From positions 24,242,001 to 24,306,000 of the forward strand of contig CM119384.1 of the NCBI GenBank assembly GCA_051294905.1: 64,000 nt of DNA. Reading direction: 5' to 3'. Of this stretch, positions 11,561 through 18,363 are shown piece by piece. Position numbers and translations under genes: made by a program. The notes below the pieces were generated by a model, which was given only the letters and a program-made list of their open reading frames with translations, ran no database searches and was not told the origin of the DNA. The DNA comes from Botryllus schlosseri. Lineage: Eukaryota. How positions within the stretch are numbered: position 1 is the first letter of the stretch; every line of letters begins with the position of its first letter.

Positions 11561-11867
11561 GATCGATCGCTCGCTCACTCACACGCGCCACGGGTGGTGC
11601 GCCGCCTCGCCTTGATTGCTCAGCGGGTGTCTGTCACCGTTATTGCTTGCAAACGACTTGCTGCGGATTGGTGAGCTGCAGCTGCGGCGAACGACATACA
11701 CAAAACACTACACGGCATCCTTAATTTGTCAATTAAAATTTGTGAGCGCTCTCGGCACGAAAGTAACATTTTTAAACTTTTTAAATTTCATACACGGAAA
11801 CGTAACTCACCCACAATTTTAACTCTAGTGATGATGATGTTTGATGTATACTCCGACACGTCGGAGC

Positions 11868-12020
11868 GTGCAGGCCAAACTTGGAGGTACTGCAATACCA
11901 AGATGACCCACGGCAGAGGCGCAGCAAGCCGCAAACACTCCACCAACGCTGCAAAAATCAAATTAATACACAGAGGGGGTCGATGACCCCCGTTACAGGT
12001 ATTAACCTATAAAGAACAGA
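11868..12020 (-). ncRNA. U2: U2 snRNA gene, 3' portion (from TCTGTTCTT to the 3' end)
   Basis: TCTGTTCTT; SL IIa ATAGGT-TAAT-ACCTGT; IIb GGGGTC-ATC-GACCCC; Sm site GATTTTTG; SL III with CTTG loop; SL IV CTTGG-TATTGCAGTACCT-CCAAG. Confidence 0.93.
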
Positions 12021-15000
12021 TTTTTTTGTTTGTAATATTTTATTTCAGCAACATTCATGAAAAGAAATATGCACGTTGAAATAAATATAGTCGCGACTTC
12101 GGTCACCTTATACATATGCAATACATATATATAGAACAATACCCGCCATTTACGGTGGCGGGGAAAAAGATTTTATTTTACAAAAAATAAATGGCGAAAA
12201 ATCACAAAATGAAAATGCGATATTATTATAAGGGCCAGAGAAGACATGGCCAGTTCGCCCGGGGACAAGGGACACTAACACAGACAAAGGCCTCCACCAA
12301 AAACACACAATATATGTGGTGGAGGCCGACAAACAGCATAAAAATAAAGGGGCGAACTGGCGAGGTCCGACTGCAGGCATTATCATAATATTTGTGGTGG
12401 TGGAAGTCGAAAAATAAAATTAGTCGTCATGAAGTGGGGGAACTCCTCCCCTTAGCATTTGGAACCGCACGGGAACTACAATCAAAACTAAACAACACAG
12501 GGGTCCACTTATGTTAATTTGGGGAGGAGTTCCGTGAATCAATCCAGTGTCCAGTTGCCTGCAGTCGAACCCCGTGATGGCTAGCGGGCTAAGCTAATAA
12601 CCAAAAACACAAAACACATAACAAATAAAAAGCACGTGAAGGGGGGGGGGATCAAGTCCTCTCGTGGTCCCGCACACTACACCAAGCCTTCCAGACACGA
12701 TGAGAGCCGCGCTGAGAAGCGACCACGGCTCGCTCGGAGACCAGTCTGGACCCGAAGACCGAAACACCCATCGCACGTAAGGTGGTCAGGTTCCCGGGGT
12801 GGTAACTCCCCAGGGACCCGACCGCGAACGTGTGCATCTCCACCACCTTGGCCGTGGCAACGCGGAGAGACTCACAGAGGTCCTTGTACTTTGCGTGTTT
12901 CAGTGCGACGGCAGCGTCCATACTGGCTACCCCATTCTCGAAGGGGCACACCACATCGATGACTAAGACCCGGCGACGATCCGCTAGGATGAGGTCGGGC
13001 CTCAGCCGCCTGTTGGCTAATGTGGCGTGCTCCTCGCAAACGCGGTCCACATCACATCTGAAAAAGGAAGAAGAGCTTGGAATACAATCCAGGAGCACCC
13101 CAAGTACCGAATTGTGCCTGTTCGTGATGCTATCCATCACTGGCAGGCAGTGGTTCAGTACGTGGGGCAGGGTCTCGGTATGCTGTCCGCACTTGCAGCA
13201 GACCTCACTTGGCTCCACACGTTTTCTAAACCGACCCCGGATCGACCGGAGCGGCAGAAGATTCAGTCGAGCTTTAAGCATCCAGCTACGCTCGACTGCC
13301 GTCAGGACGTTGGAAGACCGGAGGAAGCGATTGGAGCTCCCGTACCGGCTGTGGCACTCCACAGTTTTACCCTGGTCGGGAAGCTCCATCCACCGTGTCT
13401 TCCAACGCTGGTTCACCTTCAGGTGAAGGAATTTGGTTAAACGACCCAAATCCTGACAGCAGTCGGCGCCTAGAGCCAACTGGTAGAGCCCGTCTTCGGT
13501 CACGAACCAGCGAGCACCGAGACGCCTAGCAACGGGTCGGACCTCGGTCCAAAGCCCGTAGGCGTCTCCGTACGCCCTGGAATCGTGCCCTGTTAAACTC
13601 GACTGTCAGGGTCTCCGACGCCTCTGGGACTCGGCAAGTCCTCCGGACGACCAGCGCCAACCTTCCACGCGCAACCGCCCGCACAGAGGGGTCAGTGGAA
13701 TTGACCATTTTGGCGGCCTGGGAAAGCCTCAACACATCTGCTTCGCAGCAGAGGTTGGGAATCCCCAGACCGCCAGTCGTCAGCCCAGCATGGAAAAAGG
13801 GCTGACACGCTCTGTTAGGGAGGCGGAATTCCGCCTTCACCAACGTGCGGATACGCGCATCCAGGCGACGCAGATCGCTTCGGTAGAACTTGCGGATTCT
13901 CAACTGAAAAAGGATTCTTGGAATAACAAACCTCTTCAGTGCGAGCAGCTTCTGAAATGAGGTGAGATGTGACAGAAAAAGTCTGTCACAATAGGCCTCG
14001 AAAGTTTTAAGGGCCTTCTCACCTTTCTCGGTTGCCTGGTAACCCATGTTCTTGCCCAGGTATCGCCAGAAAGAGTCACGATCGAGGACCCGGACCTCGC
14101 CACCATCAAGGCAGAACGGGGCCGAGTCCACGATCGATCGGCTTCCCTTGAACCCCAAGGCAAGAACACGACACTTGGTGGGCTTGAACTTCATACCAGA
14201 CCACCGAGAAAATTCATCGCACAGATCTAATTGTGCTTGAAGCTGGACGCGAGACGAAGCACACAGACAGGTGTCATCTGCGTAACCCTGAACTCTGACA
14301 GTGACGCCATCCGCTGCAGAAAACCGATAACCGCTGCTTTGAAGCCCAGCAACGCCACGCAGGAGAACCTCCATGACCAGGTTGAAGGTGATGGCCGATA
14401 AAGGGCATCCTTGACGGACACCCTTCCCCGCTGGAATGGGGTCTGTCGGACCAGAGCTGGTCGCGACTGCAAACACGTTAGACGCGTAGATATCGGTCAT
14501 CACCTCCACCAGGTACTCCGGGGCGTTAAAGTGCTTCAGGACCTCAATCACGGATCCATGCCGAACGGTACCGAACGCATTGCGGATGTCAAGCCAGGCA
14601 AGATAAATATCCTGCCTTGACGACTTGGCATCCGCAAGCAAGGACTCAAGCATGAACACGTGCTCGAAGACCCCCTCTCGCGGAACAAACCCCTTTTGTT
14701 CCATGGAGATAACATCTCCATCGGATGCCCAGCTCTGAAGACGACGAGCGATTACGGACGCGTAGATCTTGTACAGCGTCCTGGATAGCGCGATGGGTCT
14801 CCAGTTGCCGACGTCTTGCATGTCGCCGTCGCGGTCCTTTGGAATCAGGATTACCCGCGACGAGCGCCATACAAGTGGAATACGTCGACAACGCCTACAG
14901 ACTTCGAAAAGCTCAGAGAGGATTTCTCCCTTGGGGTCTAAGCGTTTCCAAAATCCATAGGTGAGACCATCGGAGCCTGGCGAACTACTGGTGTTTAGAG

Positions 15001-18000
15001 TCGCCAGAACTCCTGCTACCTCTGATGGAGTAATCGAATCGTCGTCAACAGCAGAAGCCAGGTTGCCCTGGTAACTGTGCTGAGTCATCCAGCGAGGAAA
15101 AGCAGCAATATTATCAGTGACGTCAGCGGCGGCGTCAGCACGAAATTTCCGCTCGATTACGTCGGCAGGAATTTCGCACCGTTTACTGCCAGAATCATCC
15201 TCGATGATCCGTCTGACCGTTTCCTTCTGATTGCGCCAGAAAGCGGACCGAAGATGTTGGGCTACCCCAGGTCGACACTCGCGCTGGCCATTCAATTGAT
15301 TGACCTTCGCACGGCGTTGTGCTTCGCGCGAGTATCGGTTCCTAGGGCGTTTACGGCCGGGAGGGCGGCTGCAATCAGAGGCACGGACAGTCCAGAGCTC
15401 CAGCTCACGTTCAAGGTGCCCGAAAGCCTCGGTGTTATGAGGACATTCTGACACCAAGTCCGCAAGCTCCGAGCGCAACTCGCGCAGATCGACTTGTGCA
15501 CGAGGTGCGCTCGGTTCGGGGGAAGGCACGTCGACTTCTATTTGGTCGCGTGCATTTACCGAAGGAGACAATCTCGTCGGGCTTTCACAGCCGCCGACAG
15601 CTCCGGTAACTTCGGAGCGTTCGACCGCTGTTCCAGCCGTCACAGAACGTGTCTCGTCCGCAAGTGGGCGCGAGGGAGACACGCTCTGACCGACGGGAGG
15701 CGAGTCTACGATGTTCGGACTCGATCCCGCCGACGATATCTGTTTCAGATCATCGCGTGTGGTGGGGAAGGGACTTCCCCGGTCCAACCTGGCAAGGAGC
15801 TCTTGAGTAGAGCTCGGGCTGCCAGGCAAAGGTGCTTTAAACAATTCCGAAAGCGATGGAATGGGGCTTGGTGAAGAGACAGGGGTCAAACGGCTCTTCA
15901 CTAACGATTGGGGTGGGGAGGGAGTAAACTCCCTTGGGGGGGAAACCACAATTTTTGGGGGTGTGGTACGTCGGCCTAGGGACTGTCTGCTATCCCCGGC
16001 AGTCCGAAGCCAGGCACGGGCGGCAGGTAAGGCCCCAGTGACTGGCCTACGGACCGGGAATCGGCTAATAAGAATTGGGGAAGGGGTTCGGGGCGCAGAG
16101 GAATTTGATGACGTCACGACTGTTGGCGAGTCGCGCGGCCCAAAGGATGTATTAGAAGACGTGGAGCTATCACTACGAGAAGAGGGATAGAATCTCATGG
16201 ACTTTATTTTATTTTTTGATTTTTTACAAGAATCGACAGAGCGTCGAGATTTATTCGAAATCCGTGACCAGGGCCTAGATGACACGGTTACCAAGGAGGT
16301 GGTATCCGACGAGAACGAAAGATTGGCCACGGATAAGGAGGGATCCGGTATAGTACCGGGAAAGGAAGTACAAGAGCTTTCCGCTGCGTCAACGGCAAAG
16401 GGGACTAAAGAACGCGAAGAAATAGGGGAGATCGCGTCGACTCGCGAAACAGTCGTGGACGTGGCTGGGGATGAGTTACCGGATGCGGACACAGCTCCCC
16501 GTAGGCGGCAGGCGGACCAATGGTTCTTGGCAGCGATCATATCAGGCTGCGCAAGAATTGTCCATTGGTCACATCTGCCGCACACGACATCATAATTTAT
16601 CAAGTTTTTTGTGATGTCGTGCTTGCTACAAATGTGCTTCTGAAGTGAAGCCAACAATTTGTACGGGGAGCCCTGCTTATCGCAACCGGTAACTGGGCAA
16701 GGATACAAAGTATCCTTGCCGTTATATTTAACAGGTACAGTCAATAATATTTCCAAGGGGATACCAGTTTGCTTAAAAGCCGAGTCCAAGGGGATAGCAA
16801 ACTCGGGGTGACAGGACTTAAAATGCTCCTTCGCTTTCGAAACCAGGTTAAAGCACTTTCCACAAGGCGGACAGGCATACCAACTATGTTGTCGCATGCC
16901 CTTGCACCGCTTATAGTGACAGGTCATATTGTGATCCGAATCCGAAAAAAAAAACGACATTTCATGCACTGCATATGAAACCTGTCACGGCGGTGCGAAA
17001 AAGCCAAATGATCCGTTAATTCAACAGATACCGAGAACGACAAACCACAATTTCGTTTTGGACATGCGACAACATCGCTCGTTCCTGGACCGTGGTACGG
17101 AACAACGAGAGGGCTTGAGTTTCCACTAGCCATCGAAGAAAATGCGGAGTCTAGGCCTAAAGGTGACCGAGTCGCGACCTATTACAACGAATATAAATAT
17201 AACTAGGATCAAATCTCGCACACAATTAAACGTAACGAAATGAGAATTGGAACAATAACTGGAAGCAAAGACTAAGCGGCCTGCACCAGCGTTCGCTATT
17301 AGATGGGATAGGAAAGGCGACAAAATGAACGAATAGTAACAGACAATTAAAGGGACAATACAAAGGTTAACCAAGGGGTCGAAAAGGAATAGCGAACGCG
17401 TTAGGATACAGGCCAGACGTAATTGTGTACCCACGCCGGACTTAATTACCCCCGCGTCAGCAGCGCTACTGCTACGCCCTACACGTATGTTAACGCGAAC
17501 GGTAAAATACGAATTTACCTTACGAATGCGCGTTAACACCCGGGTTTTCCTCGCCTTTGCAGATCGACGGCTCTCTGTTGATACTGATGTTATGTCCAAA
17601 CGATTCGCCGTCGATCTTCGGCCGTCCTTTTGAAGCGGTATTGATGTTATTCCGCTCCTGATCTTCTTTAGGACGGCGTGGCAGTTCTTCTCGCTGCTTT
17701 GTGCTTGATTTGCAGCGAGGCGGCGAGGAATCCCGACGTGTAGGGCCTCGACCAGAGTTGCACACGGCAACCTTTCTGCTATAGTCGAACAGTTAAGGCA
17801 AGCGATCCAAGATCACTCCGGTGGTTGAACGACGCGTTCAAATCACACCGTACCGTGGCAAAAGCAACGGAATTGATAGGCTTCTTCGTTGCTTATTCCT
17901 TGTTGCAGCGTAGACGGCTACGCCTTAGTTGAGCAACAAGGAATCTCTGGCCGGCGTTGGAATTGTAGCTCCGGAATAACTAACCTTTCCGGAGAGTCCA

Positions 18001-18149
18001 ACGTTTGTAGCAGAAGATGGTGGTGAATGACCGGCGGCAGAGGCGCGGCAAGCGGCTGCTGAGACGGAGGCGGTCGAGAAATCTTCTTCTGGAGTTCATT
18101 GGTCCGGCGTGGGCAGCGTCTTCGGTTGTCGAACGTAGGAGTCGGCGAG
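12021..18149 (-). mobile_element. Utopia/NeSL-type RLE non-LTR retrotransposon, full length, inserted in U2
   Basis: A7 tail abuts U2 TCTGTTCTT; 5' end abuts the U2 5' fragment; ZF-RT-CCHC-RLE ORF. Confidence 0.93.
12652..17133 (-). pseudogene. Utopia ORF: N-terminal Zn fingers, RT, CCHC knuckle, restriction-like endonuclease; frameshifts at ~16950 and ~13595
   Basis: SSPGSDGL, NWRPIAL, WLDIRNAFG, GVRQGCPLS, YADD; CCKCGQHTETLPHVLNHC, RHN, RPDL, IDVVCPFE, KY, VGSLGS. Confidence 0.93.
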
Positions 18150-18182
18150 ACTTGATCTTAGCCATAAAGGCCGAGAAGCAAT
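18150..18182 (-). ncRNA. U2: U2 snRNA 5' end (33 nt)
   Basis: ATTGCTTCTCGGCCTTTATGGCTAAGATCAAGT; the following GTAGTA is absent. Confidence 0.93.
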
Positions 18183-18343
18183 GGGGAGGAAGGGCCCTTG
18201 ACACTGATATTGAGTGATTTGACAATAATTTTTCACCCGATTTCGTTAATCGGAAATTTTTCGCGATCGAAAATTATCGACGACCTGGTCACCGTAAATA
18301 CTATTTTATTCAAATCCAAATTTTTTTTACCGCAATAACTTAA

Positions 18344-18363
18344 GGTTAGGGTTAGGGTTAGGG
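18344..18363 (+). repeat. Interstitial telomeric-type repeat GG(TTAGGG)3
   Basis: ggttagggttagggttaggg read directly. Confidence 0.85.

What the first reader, a model, noticed from the sequence alone, without database searches (positions are those of the whole stretch)
17995..18182. The Utopia 5' leader is a collinear, degenerate full-length U2 snRNA
18027-18056 matches the local U2 stem-loop III region (11903-11932) at 26/30. It lies 93 nt after the U2 5' fragment, versus 94 nt expected in intact U2. A degenerate Sm site (GATTTCT, 18077-18083) and a 3'-end-like CAAACGTTGGACT (17995-18007; U2 CAAGTTTGGCCT) fall in the same register. The branch-pairing, IIa/IIb and SL IV loop regions are unrecognisable. 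Inference: the element carries a U2-derived head that keeps some features and has lost splicing function and the 3'-end signal. This could aid U2-promoter read-through, capping or trafficking, or 5' integration. Alternatively the upstream gene is a U2 pseudogene recombined onto the element.
Basis: partly seen in the sequence, partly recalled or inferred. Interest (0 to 1): 0.8.

Follow-up and report, generated by a model that had tools for sequence, protein, structure and literature searches.

The report
U2-headed Utopia retrotransposon leader
The stretch is the start of the 5' untranslated leader of a U2-gene-targeting Utopia retrotransposon; it carries two real pieces of U2 snRNA at their native spacing and nothing else recognisable as U2, which suggests how this element gets transcribed.

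Summary
The core observation holds. On the minus strand, U2 nt 1-33 (18182-18150) is followed 93 nt later by a 30-nt tract (18056-18027) that matches U2 stem-loop III at 26/30. Sister copies match at 30/32. U2 has 94 nt between the two pieces. Shuffle z-scores are 6-17.

The Sm-like site, the "3'-end-like" motif and the 93-nt middle are not significantly U2-like. The Rfam U2 model recognises only nt 1-33.

At least 12 copies on 8 contigs share this leader. Four full-length copies sit outside U2 genes yet begin at U2 nt 1-10, so the head belongs to the element's RNA. That implies transcription from the host U2 start site.

The ~1.05-kb leader has no ATG after the head (about 10 expected), which fits a scanned, capped mRNA. 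The first 240 nt are the least conserved part of the leader, so I read the stem-loop III tract as a relic of a once longer U2 head. One lineage was partly re-converted towards U2.

This is a new variant of known themes: R2 co-transcription and SINEU snRNA heads. Another reader of this scan (s1-278691) noted a U2-headed copy outside U2 elsewhere in this genome. RNA evidence was inconclusive.

The parts
18183..18300 (-). U2 snRNA gene upstream (promoter) region, conserved with the upstream regions of the intact U2 genes
   Evidence: Aligns with the upstream flanks of L004, L022 and L023. It resembles the 130 nt upstream of the intact U2 genes L024/L025.
18150..18182 (-). [quoted passage not shown]
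   Evidence: Rfam U2 model positions 1-33. The same head is present on copies with non-U2 flanks, starting at U2 nt 1-10.
18057..18149 (-). 93-nt GC-rich middle of the leader, not recognisably U2. It occupies the place of U2 nt 34-126: branch-point sequence/Utopia target site, SL IIa/IIb and the Sm site.
   Evidence: In-register identity is about 26%. Global alignment gives p = 0.02-0.12. It contains the conserved block CACGCCGGAC.
18027..18056 (-). U2 stem-loop III-like tract (loop plus 3' strand), collinear with U2
   Evidence: 26/30 to the local U2; 30/32 in L003/L004/L005; z = 6-17 against shuffles. It is the only part of the 5' UTR beyond the head that is similar to the U2 locus.
17955..18004 (-). 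Conserved leader structure. The outer stem is ACGUUGGA (18004-17997) paired with UUCCAACG (17962-17955). It encloses the hairpin CUCCGGAA (17994-17987) / UUCCGGAG (17976-17969).
   Evidence: RNAalifold pairs, one compensatory change in L017, and the outer stem is kept in the L008/L009 deletion. Not significantly similar to the U2 tail.
17134..17954 (-). Rest of the ~1.05-kb 5' UTR, essentially ATG-free
   Evidence: No ATG after the head in L033, L034, L031 and L037, and one in the window copy. About 10 are expected; 0/1000 shuffles reach this; the opposite strand has 8-13. The most conserved part is 300-480 nt from the start.
12652..17133 (-). Utopia ORF: N-terminal C2H2 zinc fingers, reverse transcriptase, CCHC finger plus restriction-like endonuclease. 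It is broken in this copy.
   Evidence: RVT_1 at E = 1e-31. In the window the frame is split into 1147 aa and 283 aa. Sister copies L032, L033 and L034 have one 1500-aa ORF. R2 protein homology includes the endonuclease region.
12021..12651 (-). 3' UTR and A-rich tail (...ATTACAAACAAAAAAA)
   Evidence: Read. The same tail ends the copies L031-L034.
11865..12020 (-). U2 nt 39-end, the 3' part of the disrupted U2 gene
   Evidence: 97% identity to intact U2 nt 38-194. The Rfam U2 hit is 99.7 bits.

Best explanation
The stretch is the first ~190 nt of the 5' UTR of a restriction-like-endonuclease (R2-superfamily) non-LTR retrotransposon of the Utopia kind. The element has split a U2 snRNA gene at nt 38/39.

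Shown:
- The element's RNA begins with U2 nt 1-33. Copies inserted outside U2 genes carry this head from U2 nt 1-10 and never carry U2 upstream sequence.
- A second U2-derived tract (SL III loop and 3' strand) lies 93 nt further on, at U2's native spacing.
- The ~1-kb leader is purged of ATG.

Inferred:
- The element has no promoter of its own. It is transcribed by RNA polymerase II from the U2 promoter of the gene it disrupts, starting at U2 +1, as a capped RNA that ribosomes scan to the single 1500-aa ORF.
- At integration, the cDNA copy of the head anneals to the U2 5' part of a new target. This gives a uniform 5' junction with loss of GTAGTA and re-couples the daughter copy to a U2 promoter. 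The R2 parallel is the 28S sequence left on R2 RNA (PMC3774820).
- The two collinear U2 pieces are what remains of a once complete U2 copy fused to the element's 5' end. The likeliest origin is a template jump of the reverse transcriptase onto U2 snRNA, as proposed for SINEU heads (PMC4494074).
- The middle of that U2 copy held the element's own target site, the branch-point sequence and the Sm site. It was overwritten.
- The SL III tract is a decaying relic. In the L003/L004/L005 lineage it was partly re-converted towards U2.
For: - Element anatomy and junctions.
- At least 12 copies share the leader.
- Full-length copies L031, L032, L034 and L037 have non-U2 flanks on both sides and start at U2 nt ~6-10. 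L006, L010 and L017 start at nt 1.
- The L008/L009 subfamily has inherited a decayed head.
- L033 sits in a U2 gene with its promoter. L034 sits outside U2. The two differ by about 0.004 substitutions per site and both have an intact ORF.
- SL III tract: z = 6-17 and in register. It is also present in the diverged subfamilies L008, L009 and L017.
- The residues identical to U2 in L003/L004/L005 are derived on the tree.
- ATG depletion: 0 against about 10 expected, 0/1000 shuffles.
- No ribozyme or other Rfam family in the element.
- Full-length U2-resident copies join after U2 nt 33. The 5'-truncated copies L022 and L023 join after nt 38 and 35.
Against: - There is no direct RNA evidence. One bulk RNA run gave only a few sense-oriented reads at 17620-17907 and none over the head. 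The other RNA run gave nothing.
- The full-length-U2 origin rests on two segments and their spacing. The middle, the SL IV region and the 3' end are not significantly U2-like.
- Neutral decay alone cannot explain 26% identity next to 80-94% identity, so extra assumptions are needed (selection against the target site, or gene conversion).
- The junction comparison rests on two copies of each kind.
- snRNA-type promoters are not known to make 6-kb translated RNAs.
Confidence: 0.6

Rival explanations
1. Two separate acquisitions. The head (nt 1-33) is simply co-transcribed target sequence. The SL III-like tract entered an unrelated pre-existing leader later, by ectopic gene conversion or recombination with the U2 3' half that lies ~6 kb downstream of every U2-resident copy. 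The native spacing is then a coincidence.
For: A conversion-like patch towards U2 is seen in L003/L004/L005. Nothing else in the leader is U2-like. The leader evolves fast.
Against: The spacing is 93 against 94 nt, and 95-99 in the older subfamilies. My estimate of the chance that an independent match falls within +/-1-2 nt of the native diagonal is about 1-2%. The tract is present in all subfamilies except the deletion derivative L014/L015.
Confidence: 0.27
2. Functional snRNA mimic. The U2-like leader is kept because it recruits Sm proteins or cap hypermethylation, or otherwise routes the element RNA through the snRNP import pathway.
For: AAGAT of the Sm-like site is invariant in 12 copies, and there are conserved blocks in the leader. 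From general knowledge, not tested here: tunicates translate trans-spliced mRNAs.
Against: - The Sm consensus is not kept: GATTTCT, GATTCTT, GATCCAC.
- The 5' strand of SL III is replaced, so the stem cannot form.
- The U2 model fails beyond nt 33.
- The first 240 nt are the least conserved part of the UTR.
- L014/L015 have lost the tract and L008/L009 have lost 11-14 nt (15 alignment columns) of the middle.
Confidence: 0.08
3. Local accident. The upstream gene is a decayed U2 pseudogene that recombined onto this one element copy, or the 26/30 match is a chance GC-rich similarity.
For: The tract is GC-rich, and the window copy itself is degenerate.
Against: The same leader is found in at least 12 copies on 8 contigs with unrelated flanks. 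No dinucleotide shuffle reaches the observed score in most copies.
Confidence: 0.02

Closest known systems
Utopia U2-gene-specific non-LTR retrotransposons, and the related tunicate YURE families (Kojima & Jurka 2015, PMC4640811)
   Same: It has an R2-like RT plus restriction-like endonuclease. The 3' junction is exactly before U2 nt 39. Disrupted U2 genes outnumber intact ones (4 against 2). Some insertions are at U2-like off-target sites.
   Different: The paper treats U2 nt 1-38 as flank and does not mention promoter, transcription or a U2-like 5' UTR. Here the first 33 nt of U2 travel with the element, and a second U2 tract lies inside the leader.
R2 elements co-transcribed with 28S rRNA, with upstream 28S sequence left on the RNA 5' end (Eickbush et al. 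2013, PMC3774820)
   Same: The element depends on the host gene's promoter. [quoted passage not shown]
   Different: R2 uses Pol I and an HDV-like ribozyme to set its 5' end. Here no ribozyme is found. The 5' end coincides with the U2 start site. The ATG-free leader argues for cap-dependent scanning rather than internal initiation.
SINEU retroposons with U1/U2 snRNA-derived heads; snRNA/L1 chimeras made by template switching (Kojima 2015, PMC4494074)
   Same: A U2-derived sequence sits at the 5' end of a retroposon. SINEU-3 consists of two U2 fragments with an internal deletion. A template jump onto snRNA is the proposed origin.
   Different: Those are short, non-autonomous elements that do not target U2. 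Here the head sits on an autonomous element that targets the very gene its head comes from, so the head restores linkage to a promoter.
5' transduction of promoter-proximal host sequence (the SVA-MAST2 subfamily, as cited in PMC4494074)
   Same: Host sequence downstream of a host promoter becomes a heritable part of the retroelement.
   Different: Here the transduced sequence is also the element's own target, which gives it a role in integration.

Membership tests
U2 spliceosomal RNA (Rfam RF00004), applied to the 188-nt leader | Scores at or above the family gathering threshold (46 bits) over the full model | tested here: not met
   26.8 bits (window) and 27.4 bits (L004). Only model positions 1-33 and a few terminal bases align.
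U2 spliceosomal RNA (Rfam RF00004), applied to the 188-nt leader | Branch-point recognition sequence GUAGUA, SL IIa/IIb and Sm site | tested here: not met
   GTAGTA is absent at the junction. The middle 93 nt are not significantly similar to U2. The Sm-like heptamer is not conserved among copies.
U2 spliceosomal RNA (Rfam RF00004), applied to the 188-nt leader | Stem-loop III able to form | tested here: not met
   Loop and 3' strand are retained at 26-30 of 30-32. The 5' strand GGUGGAG is replaced by CCUCCGU. RNAalifold predicts other pairings.
Utopia (RLE non-LTR retrotransposon targeting U2) | Insertion at the specific U2 site, with downstream U2 starting at nt 39 | tested here: met
   Four U2 genes on contig C14 are disrupted, with U2 nt 37/38-194 directly after the element tail.
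Utopia (RLE non-LTR retrotransposon targeting U2) | Reverse transcriptase followed by a CCHC finger and a PD-(D/E)xK restriction-like endonuclease, with no AP endonuclease | tested here: met
   RVT_1 at E = 1e-31. R2 proteins match at E = 4e-75 overall and 1e-16 over the C-terminal endonuclease region, including the RPDLI...VIDV motif.
Utopia (RLE non-LTR retrotransposon targeting U2) | RT groups with Utopia/YURE/NeSL in a phylogeny | not tested
   No Repbase Utopia/YURE sequences were available to the tools. Only PDB R2 proteins were compared.
R2-type co-transcribed element with a 5' HDV-like ribozyme | HDV-like ribozyme fold at the 5' end | tested here: not met
   No ribozyme family at E <= 1 over the whole of L033, or at E <= 10 over the leader. 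Retrotransposed copies keep the host-derived head.
snRNA-headed retroposons (SINEU-like heads) | snRNA-derived sequence is inherited as the 5' end of the retroposed unit at unrelated loci | tested here: met
   Dispersed copies on contigs C1, C2, C6, C7, C12 and C15 carry the head with non-U2 flanks.
snRNA-headed retroposons (SINEU-like heads) | Short, non-autonomous element | tested here: not met
   It is a 6.1-kb autonomous element with a 1500-aa ORF.

The most novel reading that the evidence does not exclude
A protein-coding, 6-kb retrotransposon mRNA is made from an snRNA-type (U2) Pol II promoter. It starts at U2 +1, escapes snRNA 3'-end processing because the insertion separates the promoter from the 3' box, and is translated by cap-dependent scanning through an ATG-free 1-kb leader. 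The U2 head doubles as the homology arm that re-attaches each daughter copy to a new U2 promoter.
Probability: 0.4. Interest if true: 0.65.

Novelty: new variant of a known kind. Interest (0 to 1): 0.5.

Why it matters
How site-specific retrotransposons that live in small-RNA genes are expressed is undescribed in the papers I could search, except for R2 in rDNA.

This family gives a concrete, testable answer for Utopia. The element's RNA begins at the U2 start site, and its leader is purged of ATG.

It also shows an autonomous element carrying a head made from its own target gene. That links three known phenomena: co-transcription, 5' transduction and snRNA-derived heads.

R2-like proteins are being developed for targeted gene insertion (PMC13580325). 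A natural example of a target-derived 5' homology arm is relevant to template design.

Tried and rejected
- **RNA reads.** The run of organism B gave no reads. The bulk RNA run of organism A gave about 31 reads, mostly on an unrelated repeat at 18292-18330. A few sense-oriented reads fell at 17620-17907 and none on the head. This is no test of the start site. The two 'RNA?' contig runs behave like DNA.
- **U2 tail.** SL IV, the 3' end and the 3'-flank hairpin CTCCGAC..GTCGGAG were compared with the leader after the SL III tract. The result was not significant, so my own idea that the flank hairpin was captured too is dropped.
- **Middle 93 nt against U2 nt 34-126.** The score is consistently a little above shuffles (p = 0.02-0.12), but the copies are not independent. 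I treat this as not significant.
- **Whole 5' UTR against 800 nt on either side of an intact U2 gene and against the local 3' flank.** Only the SL III tract matched.
- **Rfam scans for ribozymes or other RNA families.** Nothing was found.
- **Pfam on the 214-aa ORF in the leader and on the endonuclease part.** No hit. The endonuclease was confirmed through PDB R2 proteins instead.
- **Consensus or repaired sequences.** I built none. The alignment tool printed a majority line for the 260-nt leader, and I did not use it.

Full report
**What is at the locus.** All features are on the minus strand. The window holds one U2 snRNA gene split by a ~6.1-kb element.
- U2 nt 1-33 lie at 18182-18150, preceded by a U2 upstream region.
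- The element runs from 18149 to an A-rich tail that ends at 12021.
- U2 resumes at TCTGTTC (nt 39) at 12020 and ends near 11865.

The Rfam 'U2' hit at 11865-12068 is therefore the 3' part of the same gene, not an intact neighbour. Comparison with the two intact U2 genes of this genome (L024/L025) confirms this.

The element encodes N-terminal C2H2 fingers, a reverse transcriptase (RVT_1, E = 1e-31) and a CCHC finger plus restriction-like endonuclease. These are homologous to R2 proteins: E = 4e-75 overall, and 1e-16 for the endonuclease region.

Insertion before U2 nt 39 is the site described for Utopia (PMC4640811). The window copy is degenerate: its frame is split into 1147 aa and 283 aa. 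Sister copies L032, L033 and L034 have one open frame of 1500 aa.

**The observation.**
- The 26/30 match between 18027-18056 and 11903-11932 is real.
- With the head removed, the leader's local alignment score against U2 nt 38-end is 22 for the window copy, 28 for L003/L004/L005 (30/32 identical) and 16-19 for the diverged subfamilies. Dinucleotide shuffles give 8.7 +/- 1.2, so z = 6-17.
- The tract begins 93 nt after the head; U2 has 94 nt there. The older subfamilies L010 and L017 have 95-96 nt of middle where they carry no deletion. I estimate the chance that an unrelated match falls on that diagonal at 1-2%.
The region after the tract, which holds the '3'-end-like' motif, gives z = -0.4 to 1.5. 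The 93-nt middle gives p = 0.02-0.12 with about 26% in-register identity. The Sm-like heptamer is in register but varies among copies.
- The U2 covariance model sees only nt 1-33, at 27 bits against a threshold of 46.
- The only similarity between the 1-kb 5' UTR (beyond the head) and the U2 locus with 800-nt flanks is the SL III tract.

**The leader belongs to the element.**
- A search of the whole assembly finds the leader in at least 12 further places on 8 contigs.
- Only the window copy, L004/L033 and the two 5'-truncated insertions L022/L023 have U2 upstream sequence. All other copies have unrelated flanks, yet their homology starts inside U2 nt 1-10.
- L031, L032, L034 and L037 are full length (about 6.1 kb) and end at the tail with non-U2 3' flanks. 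Some of these flanks hold U2-like words such as CAAGTGTA|GTA.
- Three copies begin exactly at U2 nt 1 and none extends upstream.
- The L008/L009 subfamily shares a decayed head, so the head is inherited and is not supplied by each target.
- L033 is U2-resident with promoter. L034 is dispersed. They differ by about 0.004 substitutions per site and both have an intact ORF. This indicates a recent jump that took the head along.
They imply that the retrotransposed RNA starts at the U2 transcription start.
- Another first-stage note (s1-278691) had already recorded a U2-headed copy outside U2 elsewhere in this genome. My survey confirms it.

**How the RNA is probably used.**
- From the head to the start codon (window 17133) the leader is about 1,050 nt.
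- After the ATG in the loop of U2 stem-loop I there is no ATG in L033, L034, L031 or L037, and one private ATG in the decayed window copy. About 10 are expected, 0 of 1000 shuffles reach this, and the opposite strand has 8-13.
- Such purging is the signature of a leader scanned from the 5' end. It fits a capped Pol II transcript from the U2 promoter.
- No HDV-like ribozyme or other Rfam family is present, unlike R2.
- In the two full-length U2-resident copies the junction follows U2 nt 33 and GTAGTA is missing. The two 5'-truncated insertions keep U2 up to nt 38 and 35. This fits annealing of the head's cDNA to the upstream target, as postulated for R2 RNAs that keep 28S sequence (PMC3774820). 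The sample is only two copies of each kind.

**What the SL III tract is.**
- It is homologous to this host's own, lineage-specific SL III sequence.
- It keeps only the loop and the 3' strand. The 5' strand is replaced, so the U2 stem cannot form.
- Between subfamilies the first 240 nt are the least conserved part of the 5' UTR (identity 0.48-0.68, against 0.87-0.93 at 300-480). Deletion variants lacking the tract (L014/L015) or part of the middle (L008/L009) exist. I therefore read it as a relic rather than a working snRNA module.
- On a tree built from sequence downstream of the leader, the residues that make L003/L004/L005 identical to U2 (gccgTGggtcatCT) are derived. This suggests a short conversion patch from a genuine U2.
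- The native spacing favours descent of both pieces from one complete U2 copy fused to the element. A template jump onto U2 snRNA is the precedent (SINEU, PMC4494074).
- Loss of the middle would have removed the element's own target site. That step is inference.
- The main rival is separate acquisition of the tract by conversion, with the spacing coincidental. I give it about 0.27.

It is better explained as the 5' strand of a conserved stem: ACGUUGGA (18004-17997) paired with UUCCAACG (17962-17955). The stem encloses the hairpin CUCCGGAA..UUCCGGAG. There is one compensatory change, and the outer stem survives the L008/L009 deletion.

**Limits.**
- RNA evidence is lacking. The reads laid neither show nor exclude a start at U2 +1.
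- No Utopia or YURE sequences from other species could be compared.
- The searched literature holds no description of a U2-derived Utopia leader or of Utopia transcription. The library is not exhaustive.

**Verdict.** This is a new variant of known kinds, of moderate interest.

Noticed in passing
window 18345-18362: There are three TTAGGG repeats about 165 nt upstream of the U2 start. The adjoining 18292-18330 belongs to a very high-copy repeat (contig depth in the thousands).
   Followed up: no
window 17977-17986 (minus strand), loop of the conserved leader hairpin: The loop reads AAG|GTTAGT, a good 5' splice-site-like motif. GTTAGT or GTAATT is kept in most copies. A possible acceptor, cacctttag|G, lies about 25 nt before the start codon. 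No spliced reads or spliced copies were seen.
   Followed up: partly
window 16941-16960 and 13503-13528 (minus strand): The window copy's ORF is interrupted near a T10 run close to the N-terminus, and again between the RT and the endonuclease (a stop, then a change of frame). Sister copies L032, L033 and L034 have one 1500-aa ORF.
   Followed up: partly
G000 C1:6173439-6181335 and C14: The assembly shows only two intact, identical U2 genes 7.7 kb apart on C1. Four U2 genes on C14 are all disrupted by Utopia. The C14 genes have one extra base in the loop of stem-loop I (CCTTTATGG against CCCTATGG).
   Followed up: partly
L040/L041 (C14:24472489-24488349, about 170 kb from the window): Two segmentally duplicated copies of a Utopia leader lack the SL III tract. 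About 360 nt in, the leader is fused to unrelated, possibly coding sequence.
   Followed up: no
L003/L032 (C1:18445764): The leader is a mosaic. Its first ~90 nt resemble the window/L002 lineage and the rest resembles L004/L005. This suggests recombination or template switching between subfamilies.
   Followed up: no
L034 and L037, 5' and 3' flanks: Two independent off-target insertions lie in sequence that repeats the word ATGTACTGTA, probably the same repeat family. L032's target contains CAAGTGTAGTA, an 11-nt U2-like word.
   Followed up: partly
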